In this document: piece after piece, positions 3,490 through 28,764 of the stretch
How positions within the stretch are numbered: position 1 is the first letter of the stretch
How the letters are laid out: each line of letters begins with the position of its first letter
Assembly: GCF_028641065.1 (NCBI RefSeq)
Contig: NW_026576614.1
Coordinates: 1 to 64,000, forward strand
Source: Leucoraja erinacea
Taxonomy: Eukaryota
DNA: 64,000 bases
Direction: 5' to 3'
Notes under the pieces: generated by a model
The model's database searches: none
What the model was told of the DNA's origin: nothing
What the model saw: only the letters and a program-made list of their open reading frames with translations
Translations under genes and position numbers: made by a program

Positions 3490-4582
3490 CGTTGCCTATT
3501 TCCTTCACTCCATAGATGTTGCTTCACCCGCTGAGTTTCTCCAGCATTTTTGTCTACCTTCGATGTTTCAGCATTTGCTGTTCATTCTTAAACATTGACA
3601 ACCCGGTGGTCAGCTTTTATGTACTTTAGTGTTCGCCCACTCTGTCCTCAGTAGCGAATGCTTCCCGAGAGATAGCGTCACATTATTACTGATATCTGAG
3701 AACTTCGTGCATTTATAGCGGCAACTGCAAACAATCAACTGCAGATGCTAGTTGACCAAGGATAGACATTGGTAATGGGTCGGATAGCATCCATGGAGAA
3801 CATGGATAGGTGACGTTTAGGTTCGGAGCTAAATCTGAAGAAGGGTCTCTAACCGAGTTTTCACCTACCCACGTGCTCCAGGGATGCTGCCTGAGCAGCG
3901 ATGTTACTCCGGCATTGCACGTCTTTCCTTACAATTATAGATCACGGCTGGGAGTTAATTGGCGAAATCAGTACGAGGTTGAGAGGTGAACCATGATCAC
4001 GTTGAATGGTCCAAGGATCGACTTCGGCTTATTTTTTGTCACGTAATTATGTTTCCCTCCCTCCGACATGTTGAATATTGCAGCGTCGGCAGCTTCAGAA
4101 TCCAACAACGTGCCCGGAATGCATCGGATTACAAACGGAACGGACAAAATTTGACGGATGGATCAGAGCGGATGAGTCCAGCTCCGTGTTTCAAGTGTGT
4201 GTGTGTGTGTGTGTTCGCGTGTGTGTCCCAGCCCCTCCCACAAATTTGACCAAAGAGCGGCGAGATTGTGCAACTAGCATCCAGAGGGGCTATAGGTGGG
4301 AAATGGGGAGTAGGATAAACACGTGAGGTTGCGATGGAGGTAGGAGAGACGGGACGCAGAATAGAGGGAGCGGCAGACGGCGGCAGGTGGGAGAGGGGGG
4401 AAGAGGTCGGTGCAGACACAGAGTGGGATTGATCAAGAGGAGCGGAATCAGCCGTTTGAGCGGAACTGGCTGTAGTTGTGTAAGGCGGCTCCTGATCGCC
4501 ACGTCTTTGCCCCAAACCCCTCAATGTACTGCGAGGATCCGAGTGAAAACAGACCAATGGAATCACACTGCAGTTTTTCCTC

Positions 4583-4588
4583 TTTATT
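4583..4588 (-). terminator. Probable polyadenylation signal AATAAA of IgL copy 1
   Basis: AATAAA ~275 nt after the C-exon stop; conserved in copy 2 at 25800-25805. Confidence 0.65.
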
Positions 4589-4862
4589 GAGAGCTGAGTT
4601 ACACCAGATCCAATCACAACACGGTTACTGTCTACAGGGGAATCTGCCCCCATTCTACAGACAGAGGCAGTAAGACACATAGAACTGGAGACAAATCTAC
4701 AACGAAATTCGCACAGATCTCTGAGATAATTACATATTCGTGTTGTTCCCAGAAGCGGACATTGCTATAGGTTACATTGCACAATGTGGCGGCAGACCAC
4801 AGTGAAGCTCTCTCTGTGTTAAACATAGCAGAGAATTGGCAGCCGATGCCAATGGCACGAAC

Positions 4863-5191
4863 TCAGTTCGCGCAAGCGGATGAGGAGACGGTGTGGCGGA
4901 GAGGCGAGCCCAGAGAGCTGTGGGCTACGCTGCAGGAATAGCTCGTGCCCTTGCCCCATGCGGCGGCGGGGACCCGCAGGTAACTGCTCAGCCTGTACGT
5001 CTGCTCGGCGTCCGGGGACACGGCGCCCGTCGTCACCCCGCTCTCCGTCTCCACGCCGTCCACGGCCCAGCGCAGCGCCACGAGGCCCGGCTTAAAGCCG
5101 CTCACCAGACAGCTGAGTGTGGCCGAGCCCGTGCCAGTTTCCTCCGGAGACGGAGGGAGCAGGAGAAGCGAGGGCTTCCGAGACTCGCTAC
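4863..5191 (-). CDS. IGL: Ig light chain copy 1, exon 3: constant domain (SSESRKPSLLLLPPS...TVSSSACAN*)
   Basis: Acceptor CCCACACAG|GT keeps phase 1; C1-set motifs ATLSCLV, LRW, YRLSSYL, YSCSVAH; C-terminal Cys present; the three exons total 741 nt = 246 aa + stop. Confidence 0.95.
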
Positions 5192-5317
5192 CTGTGTGGG
5201 GGAGAGAGGCGGAAGAGAAGAGAGGCATTGTTAGTTGATGGAGACCGCCGGCAGCGCCACACACTGACCCCAGCTCTGGAATTCGCTTGAATGTGAATTT
5301 GCGAATGTAGCTATTTT

Positions 5318-5592
5318 AGGAGATACAGCATGGAAACTGGCCCTTCGGCCCACCGAGTCCACACTGGCCATTTATCACCCGTTCACACTAGTTCTATGAT
5401 ATCCCGCTTCTCAACCACTCCCCGTACACTAGGGGCTATTCACCGCCGGGCAATTAACCTACAAACCCGCACGTCTTTGGGATGTGGGGGAAAACCGGAG
5501 CAGCCGGAGGAATCCCAGGGAGAACTTGCAACCTCCACACAGACAGCACCCGAGGTCAGGCTCGAATCGGGGAATCTGGCGCAGTGAGGCAA
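5318..5592 (-). mobile_element. tRNA-derived SINE (HE1 / V-SINE type) in the J-C intron
   Basis: Reverse complement of the SINE body at 17010; paralog at ~27180-27445. Confidence 0.75.
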
Positions 5593-6172
5593 CGTATCTA
5601 CCGTTGAGCCAATGTGCAGCAACCACTTTAAGGAGTTATGGCGGGAAGTACCGGTACCGGAGAGGCCTCCGGATATCCAACACTCCCTGTCAGGTGATGC
5701 AAGGGGAGCGGGGGGACGCAGCGCGGCTCCGCAAGCCATTGAGAGGTGGAGAGACGATGAAACGACCGGTTCATCCCGGATTCACCCCGAGCCCGCACCA
5801 ACACGTCCTTTCCCGCTACACTCTCTAGCCGACTCGCCCAACCCGCTGCCCGGTATTTTCCTCAATGTCTTTCATCAGAATGCCTGCAAATTGTCTTCCT
5901 TGTTTCCCCAACATTAACGCGTTTGATTGTCGCAAACTGCGGCTTGTGTAACGATGCAGGAATCCCCGCTGGCGGGAATACTCTCCCGACCGCTGACGTA
6001 CGGAGCGGACCCGATTGGGCAGAATGGCCTCCCGCGCCCAGTAGAGACAGAGCAAGTTTTTACGGCGCGCAGATACAAGTCCAGCGTTCCCGGACTGGGG
6101 ATGCACCGAGCGCCGGGGAATGAGAACGACTGCAAAGGGGATTCATGGGAACAGAACGAGGGAGTCACTTAC

Positions 6173-6532
6173 TATTTATTTCCAGGATAGTCCCAGGGCT
6201 GAAGATGAATCCCACATTATTTTCCCACACTGCACAGTAGTAGACGGCGGCGTCTCCGGGCTCCACGGTGCCGATGGTCAGGATGTAGCTGTTGGCGGAA
6301 GTATCTCTGGACGGTTGGAACCGGTCTGTGATCCCACTGCCACGGTATATATCATTATCCGTTTCATACGTTACCAACCACTTTGGACTCTCCCCGGGAC
6401 GCTGTCGATACCAATATACATGGTAACTTGCAACATTTCCATTCTGCATCCGACACTCTAAGCGGGCGGTCTGTGCCGCGGAGACGGGTCCGGAAGTTGG
6501 GGTTTGATTCAGGACTGGAATCGCCAGGAGAC
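6173..6532 (-). CDS. IGL: Ig light chain copy 1, exon 2: germline-joined VJ domain, type I / NS5 / sigma-cart class
   Basis: Acceptor TTGTTGAAG|GT, donor A|GTAAGT; 360 nt; V-set hallmarks LEC, WYRQRPG, DAAVYYC run directly into J motif FSPGTILEI with no RSS or spacer; resembles cartilaginous-fish type I L chains as recalled. Confidence 0.95.
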
Positions 6533-6927
6533 CTTCAACAAAACACAATAAAAACATTCATCAAAGCCTCAGAAATAAAAGATATTTATTTAGGAATGAG
6601 ATGGTGAAGAGTTTATTTCGTCCGAGGGAGGCGAATTAATTGCCACAGACGGCGGTTTAGGCCAAGTTAATGGATGTATCTCAGGCAGAGATAGATAGAT
6701 CCGTGTTTCGTTCGGGTGACAGGGGTTATGCGGAGAAAGCAGGAGAATGGGGTTAGGGGAAAGAGATAGATCAGCCGTGATTGAATGGCCGATCACTTAT
6801 GAACGGATGAAACGACTGGGTGATCTGGAGCCCACAGAAGGCTAAAGACGCGTAGAGCACCGATGATGGTGGAGATTTTAACGAGCCTCGTTGCACATAA
6901 TCAGTCGTGAACCAACCCGAGTCTCAC

Positions 6928-6979
6928 CTGTAGGGAGCAGCAGCAGCAGAGGCCACAGTAGGTGCAGCGCTGGGGCCAT
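6928..6979 (-). CDS. IGL: Ig light chain copy 1, exon 1 (leader peptide MAPALHLLWPLLLLLPT-G)
   Basis: ATG at 6979, hydrophobic signal peptide, 52 nt ending in phase-1 donor G|GTGAGA at 6927; identical in copy 2. Confidence 0.93.
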
Positions 6980-7085
6980 TCTTCCGGACAGGCGAGCAGC
7001 CAAGGTTCAGACCCACTCGAGTTGGTCTGCAAAGTCCGGTAGCCGCTCGGGTTCCAGTATCTGGAAACCAGAGCCTCTGGTTGTC

Positions 7086-7180
7086 TTTATTAACCGGAAT
7101 ATAATGAGTGGGAGGGGCTATGTAACCTGTGTGGGTGGAGACTGATTTCCGGCGCTTATAATCTGCTGATGGCAAATTAA
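7086..7180 (-). promoter_or_regulatory. Candidate IgL promoter: TATA-like TTAATAAA, ETS-type CCGGAAAT, octamer-like ATTTGCCAT
   Basis: Motifs at 7086-7093, 7145-7152 and 7169-7177, 110-200 nt upstream of the ATG; conserved in copy 2 (~28870-28965). Confidence 0.45.
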
Positions 7181-7469
7181 ATATCGTCGAATCCTTATTG
7201 AAATTAATTTATTAGCCAAGTATGTAAACATACACGGAATTTGATTTGCCAACAGTCATTCAAAAAAAACACCAAGATACATAACCACATACAAATTACA
7301 CGTAGACTTAAACAGCCACCACAGCGGTGTGTGAGAATCCACAGGGCCACAGCATAAGCGGAGACCCAAAGCCATCAGTTCAATGTCCTTCACCGTGATG
7401 TGACCAGAGTTGTACCGACCGCTGTCACTCTCTCTGCAGTCCCTGTCCGCCCGAACAGTCAGAAAGCCG

Positions 7470-7576
7470 TAGGTACACAAAAACGCTGGCGAAACTCAGC
7501 GGGTGTAGCAGCCTCTTTGGCAGCATCTATGGAGCGAATGAAATGGGCAAAGTTTCGGGCCGAAACCCTTCTTCAG
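7470..7576 (-). mobile_element. Solo Penelope-type terminal repeat with hammerhead core, upstream of the IgL promoter
   Basis: Matches the element end at 90-182; minus strand CTGAAGA-AGGG-TTTCGG-CCC-GAAAC; paralog ~29253-29360. Confidence 0.7.
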
Positions 7577-7870
7577 AAAGCCGTCCCGTCCACACTCGCA
7601 CACTACGGGATGTCCTCAGGGAGGCATGTCCCCGCAAAACACCGAGATCACCGCACTCTCGGCTCTCCCTCCGAGTCCTCACCAGTGCGGGCAGCACGTC
7701 CATCTTGTTTTTTCGGCGACCTCACATTCCCCACTGTGATGGAAGTCAAATAACTTATCCCTAATGTCCTCCTTTTCTCCCAGCTCCACGATGTTAAAGC
7801 CGCTGTGCAGAAGAGATACGTTGAAAAAGTCGCATCTCCGTCGGGGAAAGCCGTATATGACGGGTACAAT

Positions 7871-8694
7871 ACAGTATAATATAGATAAATGTGAGGTTAT
7901 CCACTTAGGCGGCAAAAACAAGGGGGCAGATTATTATCTCAATGGGGTTAGGTTAGGTAAGGGGGAAATACAGAGAGACCTGGGTGTCCATGTACACCGG
8001 TCACTGAAAGTTGGGTTACAGGTACAGCAGGCAGTGAAGAAAGCTAATGGGATGTTGGCCATCATAACAAGAGGATTTCAGTATAGGAGTAAAGAGGTTC
8101 TTCTGCAGTTGTATAGGGCTCTTGTGAGACCACATCTGGAGTATTGTGTACAGTTTTGGTCTCCTAATTTGAGGAAGGCCATCCTTGTGATTGAGGCAAT
8201 GCAGCGTAGGTTCACGAGATTGGTCCCTGGGATGGCGGGACTGTCATATGAGGAAAGATTGAAAATACTAGGCATGTATTCACTGGAGTTTAGAAGGATG
8301 AGGGAGGATCTTATAGAAACATATAAAATTATAAAAGGACCTGACAAGCCAGATGCAGGAACAATGTTCGCAATGTAGGGCGAGTCCAGAACCAGGGGCC
8401 AAAGTCTTAGAACAAAGGGGAGGTCATTTAAGACTGAGGTGAGAAAAAACGTTTTCACCCAGAGTTGTGAATTTATGGAATTCCCTGCCACAGAAGGCAG
8501 TGGAGGGCAATTCACTGGATGGATTTAAGAGAGAGTTAGATAGAGCTCTAGGGGCTAGTGGAATCAAGGGATATGGGGAGACGGCAGGCACGGGTTATTG
8601 ATTGGGGTTGATCAGGCATGATCACAATGAATGGCGGTGCTGGCTCGAAGGGCTGAATGGCCTCCTCCTGCACCTATTTTCTATGTTTCTATGT
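7871..8694 (+). mobile_element. CR1 LINE 3' fragment, (TTTCTATG)n tail
   Basis: ORF 7764-8378 carries the CR1 RT C-terminus; paralog ~29660-30481. Confidence 0.9.
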
Positions 8695-9904
8695 TATAGG
8701 TTCTGATTGTTAATCCTATGTGTGCCCCTTAACTTTATATACGTCTATTAGGAGTCCACGCAACCTCCAGCGTTCCAGAGAATGCAACCACGTAGCTCAA
8801 ATGTCCTACTGTAGTTGACAATCCAGGCATCGTCCTGCTGAATGGTTTATTGGAAGCTAATCCACACAGCCCCAGTACATCACTGCAGGAGTTCCTCGAA
8901 ATAGCGAGCAGAGCCCAACATTTACAGCAGTTTCACCATTCCCATCCACCCACCAGCCCATTCTGGGATCACATGGCAGTTGTATTCATTGTACTTTCCA
9001 TATCGAGTCGTAGAGCAGTGAACCCCTAGCCCTTCGGCCCACCTTGTCAACGCACGTTGGCGAGTCCCAGTGCATGCATTTAGCCCTCATCTTTCTAAAT
9101 CCTTTCAATCCACATAGCTGTTCAAATATATTTCGAAAGTCATTATTGTATCCGATTCTTGCCTTATAATGGAGTGTGGGGCAGGATCGGTGAACAACCA
9201 TTCGCATGTGCCATTAATCGCCTCTTTCCACAAAGAGTCTGTCCACCAAGCTGTGATATCCAATGGTACAGCACTGCAGAATCCTCCGCCATTAACACCC
9301 AGAGGCCATAAATTAAACCCGATCAATTAAATCAAGATGTGTAAATAATATTTCACACTGAGCGGGGTGGGTTTATGGAACGTGCTGCCAGATTAGATAG
9401 TTGAGGCAGAACGAGAGTCGAATTTCAAATTTTGTGACATCCTCCTATAATATTCGTACATGCACATGGATATGAAAGTTTCGGATAGATTTGGGCCCAA
9501 CGCAGGCAGGTGGGACGAGTGGAGAAGGGGCATCATGGTCGGCACAGCTCAGCCGAAGCGCCTGTGCTGTGTGACTCTGCGGCTCCATGACTAATGTTAC
9601 CCGATCCCAGGGACAAAGGCCTAAGGTGATATGGCGAGAGATTTGTTTCGGGTTAGGCCAAAGACGCTCCAGGAATCAGTAGTGTGTTGGGATGCAACCA
9701 CGTGGGTGAGTTGTCAACTCCCCTGTACTCCTGGACAACTTGAGCCCATCCCGACACACGGGTTGGATCTGCGCCACCAACATGAGAATCCATTCCTTAC
9801 GCCACTCGCGCATGGGCATTCAGCGTGAGGTGTTACATCAGAAATAAAGACATGGATATGACAATGCATTACTTTTCCCAGCAATCATCATACTCGTGGG
9901 CACC

Positions 9905-10150
9905 CAGCCGCAGTGGAGCAGCGGGTAGAGCTGCTGCCTCACAGCGCCAGACACCCGGGTTTCTGAACCGGGTGCTGTCTGTGTGGAGCTGTTTCTCCCT
10001 GTGTCCGCGCAAGTTTCCTCCCGGTGTTCCCGTTTCCTCCCACATCCCCCCCAAAATGCTGGTCTTTAGATAATGGAAGGGTAAGATAACATGGAACATG
10101 TGTGTACGAGTGATCTTTGGGCAGCCTGTTTCCGTATTGTTCCTTTAAAA
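9905..10150 (+). mobile_element. tRNA-derived SINE, degenerate
   Basis: tRNA-like head GCAGCGGGTAGAGCTGCTGCCTCACAGCGCCAGA plus shared central core; paralog ~31675-31920. Confidence 0.7.
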
Positions 10151-10529
10151 TAAAAAGCGCACAACGCAAACCATTCCCGCAGCAACCGTTCTCTGATTTT
10201 AGTTACACTACGGGCTTCGGTTTCACACTATTGTGGGCACCTTGTATAACTAATTACTAATTGATTGTATTATTGATTACTGTATATTTTCCCCGCGTTA
10301 ATACGTTAATAGGTGGATCAAGGTGCTAAAAGTGAGAATATCAACGTTCCTTTCCCTCTGCATTTGACCATTAAATACTATTAGGGCACGGGGTTCCTCG
10401 CGCCTCTGCTCGCCCTTGTTCAACGTGAAGGTGGCTGATCATTTACCCGAGTGCTGCCCTCCCGCACGAAACCCATCGCATCAATTCCCTTCACATCCAA
10501 CAATCTATCTAAAATCTCATTCAATCCAG

Positions 10530-10811
10530 AGCTGGCGTAGCAGTTGAGCTGCTGCAGGAAACCCGGGTTCGATACTGACTACGGGTGCTTGTCTGTACGG
10601 AATTAGTCCGTTCTCCCCATGTTCGTATGTTTTCCTCGCGATCTTTTGTTTCTCCCCACACTCCAAAAGCATAGAGATGTGTAGGTTAATTAGCTTGGTA
10701 TAAATGTAAATTGTCCCCAGTGTGTGTAGGATCGTGTAAGTGTGCGGGGATCGCTGGTCGGTGCGGACTCGGTGGGCCGAAGGGATGTGTCTCTAAAGAA
10801 AACTAACTAAA
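10530..10811 (+). mobile_element. tRNA-derived SINE (HE1 type)
   Basis: B-box GGTTCGATAC, central core, ACTAA-type tail; paralog ~32300-32580. Confidence 0.8.
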
Positions 10812-10985
10812 ATATGTATTGTATAAACCGAGCAACTGATTCTCCGGAGTCTAAAACGTCACCCCCCTCTGCGGGTGAGTTTATATTCCAGTCAGCCAGG
10901 GCAGACCACCCGGTCTGAGAGTGTGGTCTCTGGATCTGGAGATAGTTGACAGTGGGATTACACTCTCGCAGCACTAGAGATTATC

Positions 10986-12384
10986 ATAGAAACATTTAAA
11001 CATGGAAAATCGGTGCAGGAGTTGGCCATTAGGCAATTCGAGCCAGTATCGCCATTCAATGTGATCATGGCTGATCATCCATGCTCAGTGCCCCGTTCCT
11101 GCCTTCTCCCCATATCCCTTGATTCCGCTAAACCAAAGAGACGTTTCTTTTCAATGTATCCAGTGAATCGGCCTCCACTGCCTTTTGAGGCAGAGAATTC
11201 CACAAATTCACAACACTCTGGTGAAAACGTTTTTCCTCATCTCCGTTCTAAATGCGCTACCCTATATTCTTACACTCTGCCCCCTGGTTCTGGACTCCCC
11301 CAACATCGGGAACATGTTCTATGCGTCTAGCTCGTCCAATCCCTTTATAATTGTATATGGTTTTATAAGATCCTCTCTCATCCTTCTAAATTCCAGTAAA
11401 TGCAAGCCCAGTCCTCCCATTCTTTCATCATATGACAGTCCCGCCATCCCGGGAATTAACCTCGTGAAACTACGCTGCACTCAATAAGAAGAATGTCATT
11501 CCTCAGGAGACCAAAACTGCACGCAATACTCCAGGCGTGGTCTCACAAGGGCCCTGTACAACTACAGAAGGACCTCGTTGCTCCTATACTCAAATCCTCT
11601 CGTTATGAAGGCCTTTCTTCACTGCCTGCTGTACCTGCGTGCTTACTTTCAGTGACTGGTGTACAAGGACACCCAGGTCTCGTTGCACTTCCCCTTATCC
11701 TGCAATATTCTGACTACATTCAGATCGTAATCTGCCTTCTCGTTCTTGCCACCAAAGTGGACAAACTCACATTTATCCACATTATACTGCATCTGCCATG
11801 CATCTGCCCACTCACCCAACCTATCAAAGTCACCCTGCATCCTCATAGCATCCTCTTCACAGTTCACACTGCCACCAGCTTTGCGGCGTCTGCAAATTTG
11901 CTAATGTTACTTTTAATTCCTTCATCTAAATCATGTATATATATTGTTAATAGCTGCAATCCCAGCACCGAGCTTTGTGGCACCCCACTAGTTACTGCGT
12001 CTCATTCTGAAAGGGACACGTTAATTCCTACACTTTGTTTCCGGTCTGCCAACCAATGTTCTTTCCATGTCAATACCCTACCCCCAATACCATATGTTCC
12101 AATTGTGCCCACTAATCTCCTGTGTAGGACATTGTCAAATGCTTTCCGAAAGTCCAGATACACTACATCCACTGGCTCTCCCTTATCCATATTTGTTGAT
12201 ACATCCTTAACAAATTGCAGAAAATTGCTCAAACAAGATTTCCCCTTCATAAATCCATGGTGACTCGGTCAAATTCTGTTACTCCTATCCAAATGCGCCG
12301 CTATTACATTGCCTCCACCATCTTCCCCACCGCTGCTCTATAATTTCCTGTTTCCTCTCTCCCTCCTTTCTTAAAAAGTTGGAT
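10986..12384 (-). mobile_element. CR1 LINE, degraded RT region
   Basis: ORFs 11649-11867 and 12002-12250 (VDVVYLDFRKAFD); paralog ~32755-34141. Confidence 0.85.
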
Positions 12385-12407
12385 AACAGTAGCCCTCCTC
12401 CAATCCA

Positions 12408-13094
12408 AGGGGAGTTGCAACGAGACTTGGGTGTCATGGTACACCAGTCATTGAAAGTAGGCATGCAGGTGTAGCAGGCAGTGAAGAAAGCGAATGGTAT
12501 GTTAGCATTCATAGCAAAAGGAATTGAGTATAAGAGCATGGAGGTTCTACTGCAGTTGTACAGGGTCTTGGTGAGACCACACCTGGAATATTGCGTACAG
12601 TTTTGGTCTCCTAAGCTGAGGAAATACAATCTTGCATAGAGGGAGTACAGAGAAGGTTCACCAGACTGAGTCCTGAAATGGCAGGACTTTCATATGAAGA
12701 AAGACTAGATAGACTCGGCTTGTACTCGCTAAAATTTAGAAGATTGAGGGGGGCATCTTATAGAAACTTACAGAATTCTTAAGGGGTTGGACAGGCTAGA
12801 TGCAGGAAGATTATTCCCGATGTTGGGGAAGTCCAGAACAAGGGATCACAGTTTAAGGATAAGGGGGAAGTCTTTTAGGACCGAGATGAGAAAAACATTT
12901 TTTAACACAGACAGTGGTGAATCTGTGAGGCAGGTACATGATACTCAGTTTGATGATCAGCCATGATCATATGGAGAGAAGGCAGGTACAGGATACTCAG
13001 TTTGATGATCAGCCATGATCATATTGAATGGCGGCGCAGGCTCGAAGGGCCGAATGGCCTACTCCTGCACCTATTTTCTATGTTTCTATGTTTC
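12408..13094 (+). mobile_element. CR1 LINE 3' fragment
   Basis: RDLGVMVHQSLKVG homology and TTTCTATG tail; paralog ~34165-34900 retains ~110 nt deleted here. Confidence 0.85.
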
Positions 13095-14014
13095 TGAAAA
13101 TCTAGGTGCACAATTTCTACAGCTTCCCTTCTGTGGGTCAAGATCGGCCCTTCACAAAACCATACTGATTTCGGCCTATTTTATCATGAACTTCTAAGTA
13201 CTATATGACCTCATCCTTTATAATTGTCTGTAAAATCTTACCAACCACCGAAGTCAGGATAACCGGCCTCTCGATTCTGCTCTTCTAGTTTGCTCCCTTC
13301 TTGTATAGCGGGGTGATATTCGTGATATTCCAATCTTCAGAAACCACTCCCAACTCTACTGATTCTTTTAATATCACAACTAATGTTTCGACAATCTCTG
13401 AAGGCACCTCCTTCAGAACCCCGGTGCAATCCATCCAGTCCAGGAGACTTATCCACCCGGACTTTTCAATTGCGTTCCCACCAGTATCCCGTATAAACGC
13501 TGTATAACATTTGTACGTGTTACTCGATTGCCCCATGCTTTATTACCTGTTTGTGGTATTTGTTAACCGCCTATTATCTACGTGTAAGTCACCTGGACTT
13601 TTCACCAACACATTTCAAACTCTCACGTTAAATAGTACTCGGAATTTATATATTTAATACCGGGCTGAGAGATGCCCTCACGATTTAGCATCATTTTATT
13701 CCACCCGACCTATCCTTGCCTGTTTGGCTTTAACATCAACTCGGCCGCTTTGTATCTTTCTCGCAAGCCATCGGGGAGTCGGGAAACCTAGAGATATTGA
13801 ATGTATTCCTTGATCCAAACATGCTCATGTTGATTGTGAACAGCGGGAGCTCCGTCATCTCTGGCGTTGCTCCTGACACACGGCGCAAGAAAGTCAAAAT
13901 GCATCGCGTCTCTGGTTTCCAACTTTTATATTTAGTGCAGTACGGCACCAAACATGATTGCTGTAATTTTTGACAATGTATCTGTGGGTCTAAACCGAGC
14001 GTTTTGTTTGCATT

Positions 14015-14506
14015 TCTTCGATTATGGCAGCATGGGACCCATACACAAATAAAAACATTTCTTCCATCGAACGTGTCCAAAGACAGGCAGCTCGAATTGT
14101 TACTAACACCTATGAGAGAGAAGCGAGTGTCACCAAACTTCTGAATTCTCTGTGGTGGAACCCTCTCCATGACAGACGTGAAGCTCACCGTTTGACCTGT
14201 TTTTACATAATGTTAAATGGTCAGCTCGACATAGACTACAAGACCTACACCAAACCCAAACCAATTAGGAGCAGACGAGGGCATTCGATCCAATTTGTGT
14301 ACAGCAATTCGTTCTTCCCCCGCACAATTAAAGCATGGAATAATCTCCACCCATCTATAGTTACCCAACCAGATGCAACTAAATTTAAAGTAGCTCTTTC
14401 TTCCCAATAATCCTTTCTGGCTTAAGCCCTCCCTTCACCACCTCCAGTTTAAATTCCATTTGGAATATTTTGGAGGACCAAGAAACCAAGAACCAAGAAC
14501 CAAGAT
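14015..14506 (+). mobile_element. Divergent CR1/L2-group LINE 3' fragment with (CAAGAAC)n tail
   Basis: AWDPY..IERVQRQAAR..NSFFPRTIKAWNNL; tail CCAAGAAACCAAGAACCAAGAACCAAGA; paralog ~35555-36068. Confidence 0.75.
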
Positions 14507-14757
14507 TAGAAATCGCAGCATTTCTCCCAACAGAAGTAAAACTAAATAGCCTGCAACACTCTTTCTCTCTCGCCATGTCTAAACTGTTGCTCTCTCTCTC
14601 GCTCTCTGCCTTGCTCCTTATGTCTCCGTATTTCTTTGACCTCCCCCCCCACCCTTCTCTCTTTCTCGCTCTCTCTCTCCCACATACATTTCTCGTCCCG
14701 ACCTTTTCTTTCTCCCTCTCCCCTCTCTCTCTCCCCTCCCTCTCTCTCGCACCCCCC

Positions 14758-14789
<32 letters not shown>

Positions 14790-14854
14790 AGATTTATTAA
14801 ATCGTCTGCCATTTTATTGAGCCCGTTCGTGTGTTACCAAGAAGTATAACCAAG

Positions 14855-15293
14855 GACCGTATTTCTCGGGGGCCTAAAACTAAGCGGAAGCTCAGAGGGG
14901 ACCGTGCCTTTGCTGTGTCGGCACCCAAATTATGGAACGATCTGCCTGTCCACATTAAACAGGCCTCTTCTCTGTCTGTTTTTAATTCACTTCTTAAAAC
15001 CCATCTCTTCTCCGTGGCCTTTGATACCCAGTAAGATGTCGACTTTATTTACTTGATTTAATTTCTTTTTTGATTGCTTTATTGCGTGGTTATTATTTTT
15101 ACTCATGTTTTATGTGTTTTAATTTAATGTTGTATTTCATATGTAATTTTTGTGCTTTATGTGAGCTGTTATGTTATGTTCTGTTATGTTGTCTGTTTAT
15201 GATGTCTTGTTTATTCTTCTGTACAGCACTTTGGTCAACATTGGTTGTCTTAAAGTGCTTAACAAATAAAGTTGGATTGGATTGGATTGGATT
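14855..15293 (+). mobile_element. L2-clade LINE 3' end with (GGATT)n tail
   Basis: GDRAFAVSAPKLWNDLP..LKTHLFSVAF*, T-rich 3'UTR, AATAAA then GGATT repeats; paralog ~36430-36866. Confidence 0.8.
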
Positions 15294-15859
15294 TCTACAT
15301 TCTTTGACACAAAACCACCCATATGTCCCCTTTATTCCTGTTGTTAAACCCATAGAAGCCACGTGAATCCACAAAGCTCGCTCGCCACGGCAGACCTCGA
15401 AGATAGACACAAAACGCTGGAGTAACTCAGCGGGCCAGACAGCATCTCTGGAGAGAAGGAACGTATTCTAACCTCTCCCCCCTGACCGTACAGCACTCCG
15501 CTCTTATTTATATATATATTTAAAAACTCTTTGAACCTGTTTATTTCCAACTCCCGCGTGGCATCTACCGTCTCAACGTTTCCACTCCTCTTACCTACTC
15601 TAACCGCCCCCCGCCCCCTCTGAACATACAGCCCCCCGCTCTTATTTATATGTATTTGTTCTTTCGGACACAGACTGCACCCCGTCTCTCTGTATCACTC
15701 CAGCAATTCAAAGATGGTTTAACATAGACTGTGTTGTGTCCAGTGACGTTTAGGCCCAATATGGAGACGTTTGGCTCCGAGTGCCACTTCTCACGGGTTC
15801 CCCGGATGAAAATATTTCTAGTGTGGAACCTAATCATACAATGAACGTTACTAATGACA

Positions 15860-16165
15860 TATAACCATATAACCATATAACAATTACAGCACGGAAACAG
15901 GCCATCTCGACCCTTCTAGTCCGTGCCGAACACATATTCTCCCCTAGTCCCATATACCTGCGCTCAGACCATAACCTTCCATTCCCTTCCCGTCCATATA
16001 ACTATCCAATTTATTTTTAAATGATAAAAGCGAACCTGCCTCCACCACCTTCACTGGAAGCTCATTCCACACAGCCACCACTCTCTGAGTAAAGAAGTTC
16101 CCTCTCATGTTACCCCTAAACTTCAGTCCCTTAATTCTCGTCATGTCCCCTTGTTTGAATCTTCC
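15860..16165 (-). mobile_element. CR1 short 3' fragment (ATATGGTT tail)
   Basis: ORF 15944-16144 NFFTQRVVAVWNELP; paralog ~37431-37745. Confidence 0.85.
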
Positions 16166-17009
16166 CTTCTTCCCTATACTTCCCTAGCATGCGTTATGTG
16201 GATACGTTTGTCCCTTTTTAGATGATAGAGTCAAACAGCACGGAAACACACCCCTCGGCCCAGCTTGTCCATACTGATCGATGTGCACCCACTACACTAA
16301 TCCTACCTGCTTGAATTTGGCCCATGTCGATCCAAACATTCCCTATCCATGTACCTGTCAAAATTTAGTAATACTTGTTATAGTTTCTGCCTCAACTAAC
16401 GCCAACGGTAGCTCTTTTCATATACCCACCACACGCTGTGTGAAAAGGTTTCAGCGCGGAGTTCTATTAAGACGTTTCCCTGCCACCTTGAACCCGTCTT
16501 CTTAAATCTGCTCTAGGTATAATACTCTAGGTAAAATAAACTCTCCCCATAGATCAAGACTCAAGTCAGGGCAAAATCCTCGTAACCTTGCTGCACTCTT
16601 TCCATCTTAACATCGTCTTAGTATAGTGGGGCTACCAAAACTGCCAACAATACTTCAACTATGGTCTAACCAGTGCTGTGTACCGCTGCAAGGTAACATC
16701 CCAACTTCTATATCTAATAAAGAATGAATGATGAGGCCAATGTGTCCAAAACATACTTGACCATCTCATTTAGATGTGTCGCCACTTTCATGGAACTGTG
16801 TACCTTCACTCCTAAATGTCTGTGTTCTACAACAAAGCAGTACCATTTAATGCGCCGGTCCTGCTAAAACAGCAGCACCTCACATTTATATGCATTAAAC
16901 TACATTAACCATTTCGCAACCTACTTAAACAACAGTTAAATCGTTTCTGCCTCAACTAACTCTTCCAGTTAAGTATCGGGAGCACCGCATCCGTTGTCCT
17001 CAGCCCACG

Positions 17010-17315
17010 GACGCACAGTGTCGCAGTGGTGGAGTTGCTGCCGGAGTCCCGGGTTCGATCCCGACTACGGGTGCTGTCTGTACGGAGTTTGTACGTTCTC
17101 CCCGTGACCTGCATTGGTTTTCTCCGAGAACTTCGGTATCCTCCCACACTCCAAAGACGTACACGTGTGTAGGTTAATTGGCTTGGCACATGTAAACATT
17201 GCCCCTAGTGGGTGTAGGATAGTGTTAATATGCAGTGATCGCTGGTCGGCGCGGACCCGATGGGCCGAAGGGCTTGTTTCTGCGCTATATCTCTAAACTG
17301 AACGAATCTAAACTG
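17010..17315 (+). mobile_element. tRNA-derived SINE (HE1 type)
   Basis: A-box-like GTCGCAGTGGTGG, B-box GGTTCGATCC, central core; paralog ~38585-38889. Confidence 0.85.
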
Positions 17316-17609
17316 ATCAAGATATATAATAAAAAGGGGTATATGGCGACAGGTCGAGTACGGGTTGTTCTGAGAGCCAGTCGTCTATTCTGAGAAAAAC
17401 CGTTACACTTGGACAACTGTGTTTCGGTTTTCACCGTGACTCACCAACACCCTTCACCCCTTCACCATCTCTATACCGATGGATGGACAGTGCGATCATC
17501 ATGAGTGAAGTTTCATCCAGTTAATTATCGGGAGCACAGCACCCATTGTCCTCAGTCCAACACAGTACCCCACCCCGACCCAGACCCAGGAATTGAGGCA
17601 GAAATGAGG

Positions 17610-17889
17610 CAGAATTAAGGGACCGAAGTTTAGGGGTAACATGAGGGGGAACTTCGTTACTCAGAGAGTGGTAGCGGTGGGGAATGAGCTTCCAGTGGGA
17701 GTGGTGGAGGCAGGTTCGTTGGTATCATTTAAAAATAAATTGGATAGGCATATGGATGAGAAGGGAATGGAGGGTTATGGTATGAGTTCAGGCAGGTGGG
17801 ACTAAGGGAAAAAAAGTTGTTCGGCACGGTCTTGTAGGCCGAGATGGCCTGTTTCCGTGCTGTAATTGTTATATGGTTATATGGTTATA
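17610..17889 (+). mobile_element. CR1 short 3' fragment (ATATGGTT tail)
   Basis: Reverse complement of the family at 2741; paralog ~39185-39461. Confidence 0.85.
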
Positions 17890-18734
17890 ACCTCCCTCCT
17901 GCAGCCCCACAAGCACCAACACCTCCGCTTCGCCTCATTCACAAATAATGGTTCACAAATGTAACCGCGGCCGCCATGAACGTTCCTTCCTTCGCTGAGA
18001 TAGTCGTGAGCTCTAGAGGTTTCTTAACCTCTGCACCTCCCTGTGTTCCAGTGATATACTCTTTGAGACCACATTTAAAATGCAACTTTTGGCTCTGACG
18101 AGGTATAACTTCCCACTCAATTATATCTAAATATGTGCAAAGTTTCAAGTAGTTCACAGACATGGGTGACGAAAGTTAAATTCTAGACACATTTTCGAAG
18201 CTCGGCCCATAGCTTACAATCAAATGTGACTTGCCTGGTATGCCAACTTGGTCGCAGGGGTAAGGTGACCTGAAAGGCCTGTTCATGTGCAGTACTGCTC
18301 TATAATTGAATAACTGGTCTCAATGAAAAACGCTGTTTATCCGGTTGGAATTTCTTACTTCACTACATAAGTCTTTGCACCCCGACCATCTCCATATATA
18401 TATATTTACACTTCTCTAGCCATTCAGCGAGACTTACGGCACATACAATATCGGTATGCAGCATTAAACTCGGCGTCCTGTCTTTCCTTATTCTTGACAC
18501 CCAAACTGCAGCTCCCACCTTCTCTTCAATCATCAACCCCAATGAAATGGCTTCACCCAATCCCTCAGACACCCATTTCACATCAAGATCTTTTGTGTGG
18601 GCATTCATAGAATTATTTGTGAGAATCCTTTGTTATAACTCACATCAAGTGTGGCTGATTAATGAAACGATCAATAAATGCTCACGTTTTAACGAAATAA
18701 AGCCCTGGCTTTAATAGGACTATTCACAAACCGG

Positions 18735-25260: not shown

Positions 25261-26088
25261 GTCACACTTACTGAGTTCTGAGAACTTCGTGCATTTATAG
25301 CGGCAACTGCAAACAAGCAACTGCAGATGCTGCTTTACCAAGGAAAGACATTGGTAATGGGTCAGATAGCAACCATGGAGAACATTGATAGATGTCGGAG
25401 CTAAGTCTGAGAATGGTCTCTAACCGAGTTTTCACCTACCCACGTGCTCCAGAGATGCTGCCTGAGCAGCGATGTTACTCCGACATTGCGTGCCTTTCCT
25501 TACAATTATAGATCACGGCTGGGAATTCATTGGCGAAATCAATACGAGGTTGAGCGGTGAACCATGGTCATGTTGAATGGTCCAATGAGCGCACGGATCA
25601 TAAAGATCGACTTCGGCTTATTTTTGTCACGTAATTATGTTTCCCGCCCTCCGATATGTTGAATATTGCAGCGTCGGTAGCTTCAGAATCCAACAACGTG
25701 CCCGGCTGCTAATCGCCACGTCTTTGCCACAAACCCCTCAATGTACTGCGAGGAACCGAGTGAAAATAGACCAATGGAATTACACTGCAGTTTTTCCTCT
25801 TTATTGAGAGCTGAGTTACACCAGATCCAATCACAACACGGTTACTGTCTACAGGGGAACCTCCCCCTCTGCGACAGACAGAGGCAGTGTGACACGGGGA
25901 ACTGGGGACAAATCTACAACGAAATTTGCACTGATCTCTGAGATAATTACATATTCGTGTTGTTCCCAGAAGCGGACATTGTTATAGGTTACATTGCACA
26001 ATGTGGCGGCAGACCACAGTGAACATCTCTCTGTGTTAAACATAGCAGAGAATTGGCAGCCGATGCCAATGGCATGAACTCAGTTCGC

Positions 26089-26407
26089 TCAAGCGGATGA
26101 AGAGACGGTGTGGCGGAGAGGCGAGTCCAGAGAGCTGTGGGCTACGCTGCAGGAATAGCTCGTGCCCTTGCCCCATGCGGCGGCGGGGACCCGCAGGTAA
26201 CTGCTCAGCCTGTACGTCTGCTCGGCGTCCAGGGACACGGCGCCCGTCGTCACCCCGCTCTCCGTCTCCACGCCGTCCACGGCCCAGCGCAGCGCCACGA
26301 AGCCCGGCTTAAAGCCGCTCACCAGACAGCTGAGTGTGGCCGAGCCCGTGCCAGTTTCCTCCGGAGACGGAGGGAGCAGGAGAAGCGAGGGCTTCCGAGA
26401 CTCGCTA
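26089..26407 (-). pseudogene. IGL: IgL copy 2 constant exon (damaged)
   Basis: 5 substitutions plus a 1-nt deletion versus copy 1 (hand count); ends TVSSSA*. Confidence 0.85.
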
Positions 26408-26619
26408 CTGTGTGTGTGTGGGGTGGGGGGGGGGGGGGGGGGGGGGGGGGGGAGGCGGAGGAGGAAGAGAGGCATTGTTAGTTGATGGAGACCGCCGGCA
26501 GCGCCACACACTGACCCCAACGCCAGAGAAACGAACTCGGCCACGGAAAGTGGCACTGACTGGGCGGTGCAGCGGTAGAGCAACTGTCTTACAACGCCAG
26601 AGAGCCGGTCGGATCCTAA

Positions 26620-26872
26620 ATATAGGTGCTTGTTTGTTCGGTTTGGACGTTTATCACCGTGGCCGCGTGGATTTTCTAGGAGATATTAGGTTTCCTCCCA
26701 CACTCCCAAGACGTACGGTTGTGTAGGTTCATTGACTTGGTATCAATTTAAACTTATCCCTAGTGTTTGTAGGGTAGTAAGTGTTCGTTTGCGGGGATCT
26801 TTGTTCGGTGTGGACTCGGTGGCCGAAGAGCCTGTGTTCGCGCTGTATCTTATAAGCTAGAACTCAAACTAA
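26620..26872 (+). mobile_element. tRNA-derived SINE in the J-C intron of copy 2 only
   Basis: Central core and tail similar to 17010; lies in block 26520-27130, which is missing from copy 1. Confidence 0.65.
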
Positions 26873-27984
26873 AAGACCATCGATGACGCGAACAATTCGT
26901 GAAACCTGCGGCAAAGGACGCGGCTATTCAACCCAGCAGGTCTAAGCCGGCTAATGAAGACTGGCGCAGGTAAATCGCAGCTGCCGCCTTGCAGCCAACA
27001 TCAGGTCGAGAGCTCCAGGCCCACATGAGTAACATGGCACCGGCACCGGCCCCGGCCCCGTCCCTCCACCCGGCGCCGCTCGCCTTTACGTCGCTCTGTC
27101 GGGACGACTTAATTACGGGGTTCAATAATTCCCCAGCTCTGGAATTCGCTTGAATGTGAATTTGCGAATGTTGCTATTTTAGGAGATACAGCATGGAAAC
27201 TGGCCCTTCGGCCCACCGAGTCCACACTGACCATTTTTTCACCCGCTCACACTAGTTCTATGATATCCCGCTTCTCAACCACTCCCCGTACACTGGAGGC
27301 AATTCACCGCCGGGCAATTAACCTACAAACCCGCACGTCTTTGGGATGTGGGGGAAACCGGAGCAGCCGGAGGAATCCCAGGGAGAACTTGCAATCTCCA
27401 CACAGACAGCACCCGAGGTCAGGTTCCAATCTGGCGCAATGAAGCTACGTATCTACCGTTGAGCCAATGTGCAGCTGACATTTTAAGGGGTTATGGCGGG
27501 AGGTACCGGTACCACCATCCAACACTCCCTGTCAAGTGATGCAAGGGGAGCGGGGGGACGCAGCGCGGCTCCGCAAGCCATTGACAGGTGGAGAGACGAG
27601 GAAGCGACCGGTTCATCCCGGGTTCACCCCGAGCCCGCACCAACACGTCCTTTCCCGCTACACTCTCTAGCCGACTCGCCCAACCCGCTGCCCGGTATTT
27701 TACTCAATGTCTTTCATCAGAATGCCTGCAAATTGTCTTCCTTGTTTCCCCAACATTAACGCGTTTGATTGTCGCAAACTGCGACTTGTGTTAACCATGT
27801 AGGAATCCCCGCGGGCGGGAATACTCTCCTGATCGCTGACGTACGGCGCGGACCCGATGGGCAGAATGGCCTCCCGCGCCCAGTAGAGACAGAGCAAGTT
27901 TTTTTCCGCAGCGCCGATACAAGTCCGGGGAATGAGAACGACTGCAAGGCGGATTCGTGGGAACAGAACGAGGGAGTCACTTAC

Positions 27985-28344
27985 TCTTTATATCCAGGAT
28001 AGTCCCAGGACTGAAGATGTATCCCATGCCGCTTTCCCACACTACACAGTAGTAGACGGCGGCGTCTCCGGGCTCCACGGTGCCGATGGTCAGGGTGTAG
28101 CTGTTGGCGGAAGTATCTCTGGACGGTTGGAACCGGTCTGTGATCCCACTGCCACGGTATATATCATTATCCTTTTCATACGTTAACAACCACTTTGGAC
28201 TCTCCCCGGGACGCTGTCGATACCAACGTGCATGGTAACTTGCAACCTTTGTGTTCTGCATCCGACACTCTAAGCGGGCGGTCTGTGCCGCGGAGACAGG
28301 TCCGGAAGTTGCGGTTTGATTCAGGACTGGAATCGCCAGGAGAC
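27985..28344 (-). CDS. IGL: IgL copy 2 germline-joined VJ exon
   Basis: 360 nt, open frame, both splice sites intact; CDR3-J reads CVVWESGMGYIFSPGTILDIK. Confidence 0.92.
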
Positions 28345-28712
28345 CTTCAACAAAACACAATAAAAACATTCATCAAAACCTCAGAAATAAAAGATATTCA
28401 TTTAGGAATGAGGTGGTGAAGAGTTTCTTTCGTCCGAGGGAGGCGAATCAGTTAATGCATGTATCTCAGGCAGAGATAGATAGATCCGTGTTTCGTTCGG
28501 GTGACAGGGGTTATGCGGAGAAAGCAGGAGAATGGGGTTAGGAGAAAGAGATAGATCAGCCGTGATTGAATGGCCGATCACTTATGAACGGATGAAACGA
28601 CTGGGTGATCTGGAGCCCACAGAAGGCTAAAGACGCGTACAGCTCCGATGATGGTCGAGATTTTAACGAGCCTCGTTGCACATAATCAGTCGTGAACCAA
28701 CCCGAGTCTCAC

Positions 28713-28764
28713 CTGTAGGGAGCAGCAGCAGCAGAGGCCACAGTAGGTGCAGCGCTGGGGCCAT
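28713..28764 (-). CDS. IGL: IgL copy 2 leader exon
   Basis: 52 nt identical to copy 1 leader, GT donor at 28712. Confidence 0.9.

What the first reader, a model, noticed from the sequence alone, without database searches (positions are those of the whole stretch)
6173..6532. Paralogous VJ exons diverge by CDR-focused, tandem substitutions resembling shark hypermutation
Seen (hand count versus 27985-28344): 23 nt differences in 360, giving 15 amino-acid changes and only 3 purely synonymous codons, against 0/52 in the leader and 5 plus 1 indel in the 329-nt C exon. 11 of the 23 fall in adjacent runs: 6215-6220 CATTAT vs TGCCGC (CDR3, six consecutive transitions), 6439-6441 CCA vs GTG and 6415-6416 TA vs CG (both CDR1). 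Established: tandem multi-base substitutions characterise somatic hypermutation in shark Ig genes. Inference: pre-joined genes may be diversified in the germline by an AID-type process or short-tract gene conversion plus positive selection, giving an inherited repertoire that needs no somatic rearrangement.
Basis: partly seen in the sequence, partly recalled or inferred. Interest (0 to 1): 0.8.

Follow-up and report, generated by a model that had tools for sequence, protein, structure and literature searches.

The report
Skate pre-joined light-chain paralogs differ at CDRs
Two neighbouring little-skate antibody light-chain genes whose V and J parts are already fused in the genome differ mainly in their antigen-contact loops, as was described for this gene family in 1995; the runs of adjacent differences come from several separate old changes that other gene copies share, not from hypermutation in germ cells.

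Summary
The counts are right. The two VJ exons (6532-6173 and 28344-27985, minus strand) differ at 23 of 360 bases. That gives 15 replacement and 3 silent codons, with runs of 6, 3 and 2 bases in CDR3 and CDR1.

The genes are two clusters of the little skate (Leucoraja erinacea) type I / sigma-2 light-chain family. Anderson et al. 1995 already showed that this family is wholly germline-joined, with CDR-focused differences in which replacements outnumber silent changes.

The hypermutation reading is not supported:
- The leader lies in an 11-kb upstream stretch that differs by only 1.75%. From the VJ exon onward, noncoding DNA differs by 4-6.5%, so the exon as a whole is not elevated (P=0.2). 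Only the CDRs are (16/102).
- Once CDR density is allowed for, adjacent runs are about 2x expectation, the same as in flanking noncoding DNA.
- The unselected J-C intron shows no excess of runs and no hotspot enrichment.
- The 6-base CDR3 run is composite. Five of its six letters occur in a contig of another species, intermediate states occur in other copies, and B's whole CDR3 recurs in another paralog.

The best reading is long-term CDR diversification plus patchy exchange between paralogs. Copy B also carries likely disabling lesions. The scan followed up a similar claim on another piece of this genome, with the same outcome.

The parts
6927..6979 (-). Cluster A leader exon (MAPALHLLWPLLLLLPT, donor CAG|GTGAGA)
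   Evidence: It is identical to B's leader, 0 differences in 53.
6173..6532 (-). Cluster A germline-joined VJ exon. V-set domain. CDR1 RMQNGNVASYHVY, CDR2 YETDNDIYRGS, CDR3 AVWENNVGFI, J motif FSPGTILEIN, donor A|GTAAGT.
   Evidence: (PF07686, E=9e-17). The product equals P0058 / XP_055487192 of Leucoraja erinacea.
4866..5195 (-). Cluster A C exon (C1-set domain, ends ...SSSACAN stop)
   Evidence: (PF07654, E=1.4e-21).
28712..28764 (-). Cluster B leader exon
27985..28344 (-). Cluster B germline-joined VJ exon. CDR1 RMQNTKVASYHAR, CDR2 YEKDNDIYRGS, CDR3 VVWESGMGYI, J FSPGTILDIK.
   Evidence: The product equals the V part of P0057 / XP_055487193.
26083..26411 (-). Cluster B C exon. One G is lost at the acceptor (CAG|GTAGC becomes CAG|TAGC). 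TGC becomes TGA at the C-terminal Cys codon (B 26089, aligned with A 4872).
   Evidence: NCBI's model P0057 ends ...SSSA and reads KSNESRK, which needs a shifted donor/acceptor pair.
6215..6221 (-). Hypervariable V-J junction codons 103-105 holding the 6-base run. States seen across copies: AAT AAT (A), AGC GGC (B and the organism-D contig), AGC GGT, ACT GAT, GAT GAT.
   Evidence: table 3.
6415..6441 (-). CDR1 differences: a 3-base run, a 2-base run and two single changes. 6441 carries the B state in three other data sets. 6440, 6439, 6435, 6418, 6416 and 6415 are private to B.
3690..18076 (-). Duplicated unit A, partner 25272-39650. Upstream of about 6640 it differs from B by 1.75%. From about 6640 down to 3690, noncoding DNA differs by 4-6.5%.
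25272..39650 (-). Duplicated unit B

Best explanation
A and B are two tandem L-VJ-C clusters, 21.8 kb apart, of the little skate type I (sigma-2 / sigma-cart / NS5-type) light-chain multigene family. In this family V and J were fused in the germline long ago.

Their VJ exons are not young sister copies that mutated fast. The gene bodies (VJ exon, J-C intron, C exon, 3' flank) belong to older, separately evolving sub-lineages, with neutral divergence of about 4-6.5%. The 11-kb upstream flank and the leader are much more alike (1.75%). Either they were homogenised recently, or one gene body was overwritten from a third cluster.

On that background the framework is mildly conserved, and the CDRs have diverged about 3x faster than neutral DNA. 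I attribute this to two processes. One is repeated changes at a few hypervariable codons kept by diversifying selection. The other is short-tract exchange (gene conversion or recombination) among the many paralogs, which moves CDR blocks around. The adjacent runs are the summed result of several such steps at neighbouring hypervariable codons, not single tandem mutations.

Shown here: the anatomy, the family identity, the divergence strata, the CDR concentration, the composite nature and sharing of the CDR3 run, and the equal run excess in noncoding DNA. Inferred: selection as the retaining force, conversion as the shuffling mechanism, and which stratum was overwritten.
For: Identity: A's product equals XP_055487192 and B's equals XP_055487193 of L. 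erinacea. A is 95% identical to the published type I chains AAA87170 and AAA87171.

Strata: upstream 181/10353 (1.75%), J-C intron 34/814, 3' flank 48/743, C exon 5/322. The step persists at non-CpG sites, 1.46% against 4.0-5.65%. Downstream versus upstream gives P=1e-14.

VJ against neighbouring noncoding DNA: the whole exon gives P=0.20, the CDRs P=9e-5, and the FR lies below it at P=0.04.

Runs, observed over expected: upstream 2.1x, downstream noncoding 2.1x, VJ by FR/CDR blocks 1.9x. Real multi-base differences occur in noncoding DNA, for example 4681-4679 TAT/CCC and 5623-5621.

The CDR3 run is composite and shared:
- The organism-D contig carries the B letters at 6216-6220, 6208, 6441 and 6486, but not at 6215.
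- Other contigs carry AGC GGT, ACT GAT and GAT GAT.
- The protein motif ESG occurs in Amblyraja P0056, Logan61, Logan66 and the stingrays P0027 and P0031.
- B's full CDR3 VVWESGMGYI recurs in Logan61 together with A-type CDR2, FR and J.

Reassortment: all four combinations of CDR2 type (LIRYD vs L-TYE) and CDR3 type (SG vs N-N/D) occur among genome- or clone-derived sequences.

Patch: a contig of run X1 is identical to A over about 880 nt but differs at 6083, 6084, 6218 and 6220. This gives the ETD state found in other paralogs. The clustering has P=0.008.

Literature: at least 89 joined clusters, CDR-focused differences, replacements exceeding silent changes (PMC2192082).
Against: - By Nei-Gojobori, CDR dN (0.177) does not exceed CDR dS (0.172), so classic dN>dS selection is not shown from this pair alone. 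Only 3 synonymous changes are involved. The excess over intron divergence could come from conversion alone.
- No donor was found for B's private CDR1 changes (NTK, HAR) among the 12 skate sequences available.
- The Logan contigs could be assembly chimeras or carry somatic mutations.
- The read-laying table was truncated, so some polarity calls are provisional.
- The protein tree does not place B outside the other skate genes, so 'older lineage' rests on noncoding divergence and shared states, not on a resolved phylogeny.
Confidence: 0.75

Rival explanations
1. Germline AID-type hypermutation. Because the genes are pre-joined and carry their own promoters, a cytidine-deaminase and error-prone-repair process would act on them in germ cells. 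It would leave heritable, CDR-focused point and tandem substitutions like those of shark somatic hypermutation.
For: - The run excess under uniform placement is real.
- 15 of the 23 changes are transitions.
- If AGCGGC is the older state, as the organism-D contig and the stingray motifs suggest, the A state AATAAT arises by five C:G>T:A transitions. Two of them sit in WRC/GYW motifs.
- 10 of 23 differences lie in a WRC/GYW context in one state or the other, against 25% upstream (P=0.08).
- CDR synonymous divergence is nominally raised: 3 observed against 1.0 expected (P=0.085).
Against: - Somatic hypermutation also hits the J-C intron. Here that intron has 3 of 34 differences in runs (1.1x expectation), a hotspot odds ratio of 1.1, and lower divergence than the far 3' flank.
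- Divergence does not decay with distance from the promoter. It is highest 2-3 kb downstream, and the leader and proximal L-V intron are low.
- FR synonymous divergence (0.032) is at or below the intron level.
- The 6-run and the 3-run split into changes on different lineages, with intermediates present in other copies.
- Shark tandem mutations span 2-4 bases (PMC5931798), not 6.
- The same 2x adjacency excess is seen in noncoding DNA 11 kb upstream.
Confidence: 0.08
2. Relaxed constraint. B is a decaying or dead copy, and most A-B differences are neutral changes that accumulated on B's lineage.
For: - B has lost a G at the C-exon acceptor.
- B has TGA in place of the C-terminal Cys codon.
- B has an insertion of about 610 nt with a homopolymer next to the acceptor.
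- 10 of the 15 amino-acid differences are private to B, including three FR changes.
- B has the longest terminal branch, 0.079 against 0 for A.
- Overall dN/dS is 1.12.
Against: - Neutral decay would spread changes evenly. Instead 16 of 23 sit in the 102 CDR bases, and the FR divergence (2.7%) is below the intron level.
- The V exon of B is an intact open frame with all canonical residues.
- B-type C-exon variants (F, L, D) occur in an mRNA-like contig with an intact end, Logan64. The lesions may therefore be recent or specific to this allele.
- The CDR3 differences are shared with other, presumably functional genes.
Confidence: 0.12
3. Fossil junctional diversity. A and B (or their ancestors) were joined independently in germ cells by RAG, as shown for nurse shark NS4 genes. 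On this view the CDR3 run is a relic of different V-J junction processing.
For: - The 6-base run sits exactly at the inferred V-J junction, codons 103-105.
- Germline RAG-type joining is documented in sharks (PMC2193156).
Against: - CDR3 length is constant in all but one of the 12 skate sequences (Logan65 is one residue shorter), and the flanking V-end and J-start residues are conserved.
- The ESGVG junction motif is shared with stingrays, so the join predates these paralogs.
- Anderson 1995 found no unjoined type I gene in skate and no junctional diversity.
- This idea does not explain the CDR1 runs.
Confidence: 0.05

Closest known systems
Raja (Leucoraja) erinacea type I light-chain clusters (Anderson, Shamblott, Litman & Litman 1995, J Exp Med 182:109; PMC2192082)
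   Same: Same species and same gene family. A is 95% identical to AAA87170 and AAA87171. All genes are germline-joined. Differences between germline genes concentrate in the CDRs, with replacements exceeding silent changes. The genes are expressed and possibly somatically mutated.
   Different: This report adds positional context that was not available in 1995: two clusters 21.8 kb apart in one duplicated unit, a step in divergence at the L-V intron, and lesions in one copy. It adds no new principle.
Shark somatic hypermutation with contiguous substitutions (Lee et al. 2002 Immunity 16:571, cited from PMC5931798; nurse shark NS5, the homologue of this family)
   Same: Adjacent multi-base differences, a transition bias, and concentration in the CDRs.
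   Different: That process is somatic, produces runs of 2-4 bases, and acts on FR and flanking intron as well. Here the runs are germline differences between old paralogs. They are composites, their states are shared across copies and species, and the footprint is absent from the J-C intron.
Diversifying selection on CDRs of germline V genes (Tanaka & Nei 1989, cited in PMC2192082) and AGY/WRC codon bias in CDRs (Wagner, Milstein & Neuberger 1995, cited in PMC5931798)
   Same: CDR codons toggle among Asn, Ser, Gly and Asp by transitions. Germline paralogs differ mostly in the CDRs.
   Different: From this one pair, dN does not exceed dS within the CDRs. The excess is measured against intron divergence.
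Concerted evolution and gene conversion in tandem Ig/V gene arrays (for example chicken pseudo-V donors, discussed in PMC2193156)
   Same: Mosaic sharing of short blocks between paralogs, and homogenised flanks beside divergent segments.
   Different: This is germline exchange between functional clusters over evolutionary time, not programmed somatic conversion. Tract ends and donors are only partly defined here.

Membership tests
Cartilaginous-fish type I / sigma-2 (sigma-cart, NS5) Ig light-chain cluster, skate germline-joined form | Cluster of a leader exon, one V-set exon and one C1-set exon within about 2 kb | tested here: met
   PF07686 E=9e-17 and PF07654 E=1.4e-21. Exon map and splice sites.
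Cartilaginous-fish type I / sigma-2 (sigma-cart, NS5) Ig light-chain cluster, skate germline-joined form | V and J contiguous in genomic DNA, with no RSS or spacer | tested here: met
   A single open frame runs from FR1 through YYC-CDR3-FSPGTILEIN to the GT donor in both copies.
Cartilaginous-fish type I / sigma-2 (sigma-cart, NS5) Ig light-chain cluster, skate germline-joined form | Close sequence identity to the published skate type I chains | tested here: met
   A is 234/246 identical to AAA87170 and 235/246 to AAA87171. B is 215-217/243. All fall in the same 90% cluster.
Cartilaginous-fish type I / sigma-2 (sigma-cart, NS5) Ig light-chain cluster, skate germline-joined form | C-terminal Cys for the disulfide to the heavy chain, and an in-frame canonical VJ-C splice | tested here: inconclusive
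   Met in A. In B the Cys codon is TGA and the canonical acceptor is out of frame by one base. Whether B is expressed was not testable.
Footprint of shark-type AID hypermutation (tandem substitutions) | Adjacent substitutions in excess of what the local density of change predicts, and more than in unselected flanks | tested here: not met
   VJ 1.9x by FR/CDR blocks, against 2.1x in upstream and 2.1x in downstream noncoding DNA.
Footprint of shark-type AID hypermutation (tandem substitutions) | The same footprint in the J-C intron downstream of the promoter, decaying with distance | tested here: not met
   The J-C intron has 3/34 differences in runs and a hotspot OR of 1.1. Divergence is highest in the far 3' flank.
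Footprint of shark-type AID hypermutation (tandem substitutions) | Targeting of WRC/GYW motifs | tested here: inconclusive
   10/23 in VJ against 45/181 upstream, P=0.08. The measure counts a site as hot in either state, which inflates it.
Footprint of shark-type AID hypermutation (tandem substitutions) | Each run is one de novo event that is not templated by other genes | tested here: not met
   The CDR3 run splits into at least 3 steps, with intermediates and shared states in other copies and species. The CDR1 3-run splits into 6441 (shared) and 6440-6439 (private to B).
Inter-paralog gene conversion / mosaic evolution | A block of linked differences shared with a third copy whose flanks match the other parent | tested here: met
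   B's CDR3 (9 nt differences, 6232-6208) recurs in Logan61 with A-type FR3, CDR2 and J. An X1 contig shows a 138-nt patch, P=0.008. Caveat: the Logan contigs are assemblies.
Inter-paralog gene conversion / mosaic evolution | A donor identified for every clustered difference | tested here: not met
   No sequence with B's CDR1 NTK or HAR was found among 12 skate members or 61 relatives. Only a small part of the 89 or more clusters was sampled.

The most novel reading that the evidence does not exclude
A cytidine-deaminase-type mutator (AID or an APOBEC relative) acts now and then on promoter-bearing, pre-joined light-chain genes in skate germ cells. If so, part of the inherited CDR diversity would be a heritable hypermutation footprint that selection and conversion later spread. 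An example would be the five C:G>T:A steps from AGCGGC to AATAAT at the V-J junction.
Probability: 0.07. Interest if true: 0.75.

Novelty: already known. Interest (0 to 1): 0.22.

Why it matters
If germ-line hypermutation had written these differences, somatic and inherited antibody diversification would be linked in a new way. The evidence points instead to the textbook picture for this family. It is a large set of pre-joined genes whose antigen-contact loops were diversified over long periods and shuffled between copies.

The practical lesson for the scan is that comparing an exon with its leader and C exon can mislead. This happens when a duplicated unit is a mosaic of strata of different ages. 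The modest additions here are the step in divergence at the L-V intron, the sharing of the ESG junction motif across species, and the lesions in copy B.

Tried and rejected
- A search with the VJ exon alone found only one protein, because the length window shuts out full-length chains.
I reached full-length relatives through database proteins by id: P0001, then NCBI's own model P0057.
No paralog or Amblyraja DNA could be fetched, so GENECONV-type tests and nucleotide donor searches were not possible. Read laying on four coded data sets served as a partial substitute.
- CpG decay does not explain the higher downstream divergence, because the step persists at non-CpG sites.
- A test that placed the 23 differences only among the 18 differing codons gave P=0.44. 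I discount it as partly circular.
- The protein tree did not resolve whether B is basal among skate genes. I therefore dropped the claim that B's J-end residues D and K prove an older origin.

Full report
**What is there**

Both regions lie on the minus strand. Each is a compact light-chain cluster.
- A leader exon (A 6979-6927).
- A single exon in which V and J are already fused. In A this is 6532-6173, with an open frame from FR1 through YYC, CDR3 and FSPGTILEIN to a GT donor.
- A C1-set exon (A 5195-4866).

Pfam gives V-set (E=9e-17) and C1-set (E=1.4e-21). The nearest solved chains are antibody light-chain V domains.

The products equal two RefSeq models of the little skate Leucoraja erinacea on one 81.6-kb contig. 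A is XP_055487192 (P0058) and B is XP_055487193 (P0057). Both sit in one 90% cluster with the published 'type I immunoglobulin light chain' sequences AAA87170 and AAA87171. A is 95% identical to them.

Type I is also called sigma-2, sigma-cart or NS5. [quoted passage not shown]

Full-length relatives were reached through database proteins by id.

**The observation**

- 23 of 360 bases differ.
- 18 codons differ: 15 replacements and 3 silent.
- The runs are 6220-6215 (six transitions), 6441-6439 and 6416-6415.
- The leader shows 0 differences in 53 bases.
- The C exon shows 5 substitutions and one 1-nt indel.

Under uniform placement the adjacency is far beyond chance. A run of six among eight differences in the 30-nt CDR3 has P=0.001. 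16 of the 23 differences lie in the 102 CDR bases.

**The baseline was wrong**

A and B lie in a 21.8-kb duplicated unit (3690-18076 and 25272-39650). Divergence along it is not uniform:

| Stretch | Differences | Divergence |
|---|---|---|
| 11 kb upstream | 181/10353 | 1.75% |
| Leader exon | 0/53 | 0% |
| L-V intron | 9/357 | 2.5% |
| VJ exon | 23/360 | 6.4% |
| J-C intron | 34/814 | 4.2% |
| C exon | 5/322 | 1.6% |
| 3' flank | 48/743 | 6.5% |

The step lies near 6640, at a 27-nt indel inside a high-copy repeat of the L-V intron. It is not a CpG effect. At non-CpG sites divergence is 1.46% upstream and 4.0-5.65% downstream. Downstream versus upstream gives P=1e-14.

Against its own noncoding neighbours (82/1557), the results are as follows.
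- The VJ exon as a whole is not elevated (P=0.20).
- The framework is slightly below them (7/255, P=0.04).
- Only the CDRs are above them (16/102, P=9e-5).

So the leader belongs to a younger or homogenised stratum, and the C exon is conserved by purifying selection. Neither is a fair comparator for the VJ exon.

**Runs against flanks**

Real multi-base differences also occur in noncoding DNA of the unit. Examples are 4681-4679 TAT/CCC, 5623-5621 GTT/TCA and 4808-4807.

The number of differences lying in runs, relative to random placement at the local density, was as follows.
- Upstream: 2.1x.
- Downstream noncoding DNA: 2.1x.
- VJ exon with each FR or CDR block given its own count: 1.9x (P=0.03).
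- VJ exon under uniform placement: 4.0x.

The tandem excess therefore follows from CDR concentration plus a background adjacency excess that is not specific to the exon.

**The runs are composites, and their states are shared**

I therefore laid contigs of four coded data sets on 5700-7000 at 85% likeness.

One 1211-nt contig of organism D covers 5700-6749 with 46 differences. It carries B's letters at 6216-6220, 6208, 6441 and 6486, but A's letter at 6215. This reads ESGVGYFF, the CDR3 of the Amblyraja radiata protein P0056.

Other contigs give other states at the same codons.
- AGC GGT (organism B).
- ACT GAT, which reads ETD (run X1).
- GAT GAT (organism C).

At the protein level:
- ESG also occurs in Logan61, Logan66 and the stingray genes P0027 and P0031.
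- ETD, END and ENN occur in other skate sequences.

The six-base run therefore splits into at least three steps at three adjacent hypervariable codons at the V-J junction. One of its two end states is older than the split between skate genera.

The three-base CDR1 run splits into 6441, where the three non-reference data sets (organisms B, C and D) carry B's letter, and 6440-6439, which are private to B.

Of the 15 amino-acid differences, the five in CDR3 are shared with other copies. The other ten are private to B.

**Signs of exchange between paralogs**

- B's entire CDR3 (VVWESGMGYI) recurs in the mRNA-like contig Logan61. That contig also has A-type FR1, CDR2, FR3 and J. No 30-nt stretch is identical between A and B from 6208 to 6180. 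A k=31 assembly chimera is therefore unlikely at the J side.
- All four combinations of CDR2 type and CDR3 type occur among genome- or clone-derived sequences.
- The Amblyraja gene nests among Leucoraja paralogs (84/76), and B pairs with Logan61 (97/91).
- In run X1, contigs match A exactly over 5700-6061 and 6233-6749. They differ at 6083, 6084, 6218 and 6220, a 138-nt patch (P=0.008) that installs the ETD state known from other paralogs.
- The step in divergence along the unit is itself a mosaic signature.

**Tests of the hypermutation idea**

The unselected J-C intron should record a transcription-coupled mutator. It does not.
- It has 3 of 34 differences in runs, which is 1.1x expectation.
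- It shows no WRC/GYW enrichment (5/34, OR 1.1).
- It is less divergent than the distal 3' flank.

FR synonymous divergence is 0.032, at or below the intron level. In the exon, 10 of 23 differences lie in a WRC/GYW context in one state or the other. By the same inflated measure upstream DNA gives 25% (P=0.08).

Shark tandem mutations span two to four bases (PMC5931798).

- CDR dS (0.172) is as high as CDR dN (0.177), but this rests on three changes.
- If AGCGGC is the older state, AATAAT arises by five C:G>T:A transitions.

Both are equally expected from imported tracts and from the ordinary transition bias. I keep germline deamination as an unexcluded minority reading.

**Copy B is damaged**

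- B lacks one G at the C-exon acceptor (CAG|GTAGC in A, CAG|TAGC in B).
- Its C-terminal Cys codon reads TGA.
- It carries an insertion of about 610 nt and a homopolymer next to the acceptor.
- NCBI's model keeps the frame only with a shifted donor and acceptor, and it ends at ...SSSA.
- B also has the longest terminal branch in the tree.

Relaxed constraint may therefore add to B's private changes. It cannot explain their concentration in the CDRs.

**Comparison with what is known**

Anderson et al. 1995 (PMC2192082) characterised at least 89 type I clusters in this species.
- All were germline-joined.
- Replacement substitutions exceeded neutral ones.
- The genes were expressed and possibly somatically mutated.

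Germline joining by RAG-like activity is discussed for nurse shark (PMC2193156). The scan itself followed up a similar claim on another piece of this genome and reached the same conclusion (s1-877462). I reached mine independently on this window.

**Verdict**

The phenomenon is already known. Interest is low to modest.

Noticed in passing
window 26083-26435 (cluster B C exon and acceptor); 26089: Copy B has lost one G at the C-exon acceptor. It also has TGA in place of the C-terminal Cys codon that normally bonds the light chain to the heavy chain. NCBI's model rescues the frame with a shifted donor/acceptor pair. B may be a pseudogene or a null allele.
   Followed up: partly
window 3690-18076 vs 25272-39650, step near 6640: The 21.8-kb duplicated unit is a mosaic. 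It differs by 1.75% over 11 kb upstream of the genes and by 4-6.5% in noncoding DNA from the VJ exon to the 3' end. The break lies at a 27-nt indel inside a high-copy repeat of the L-V intron.
   Followed up: yes
window 6620-6800 (L-V intron of A; 28450-28585 in B): A short interspersed repeat has enormous summed contig depth (1e5-1e6) in all four data sets laid, so it is very abundant in several related species.
   Followed up: no
window 26415-27130: B's J-C intron holds an insertion of about 610-700 nt that A lacks. It begins with a long G/C homopolymer and contains a repeat with 75-78% copies at 10648-10782, 17070-17312, 32419-32551 and 38644-38886.
   Followed up: partly
window 6083-6220, run X1: Another data set of the same species label carries A-identical flanks but four differences within 138 nt, giving CDR3 ETD instead of ENN. 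Two of the four are an adjacent pair in the intron. This looks like a short conversion tract or an allele.
   Followed up: partly
window 4118-4488: A's 3' flank holds a 371-nt segment that B lacks and that has no other copy in the window.
   Followed up: no
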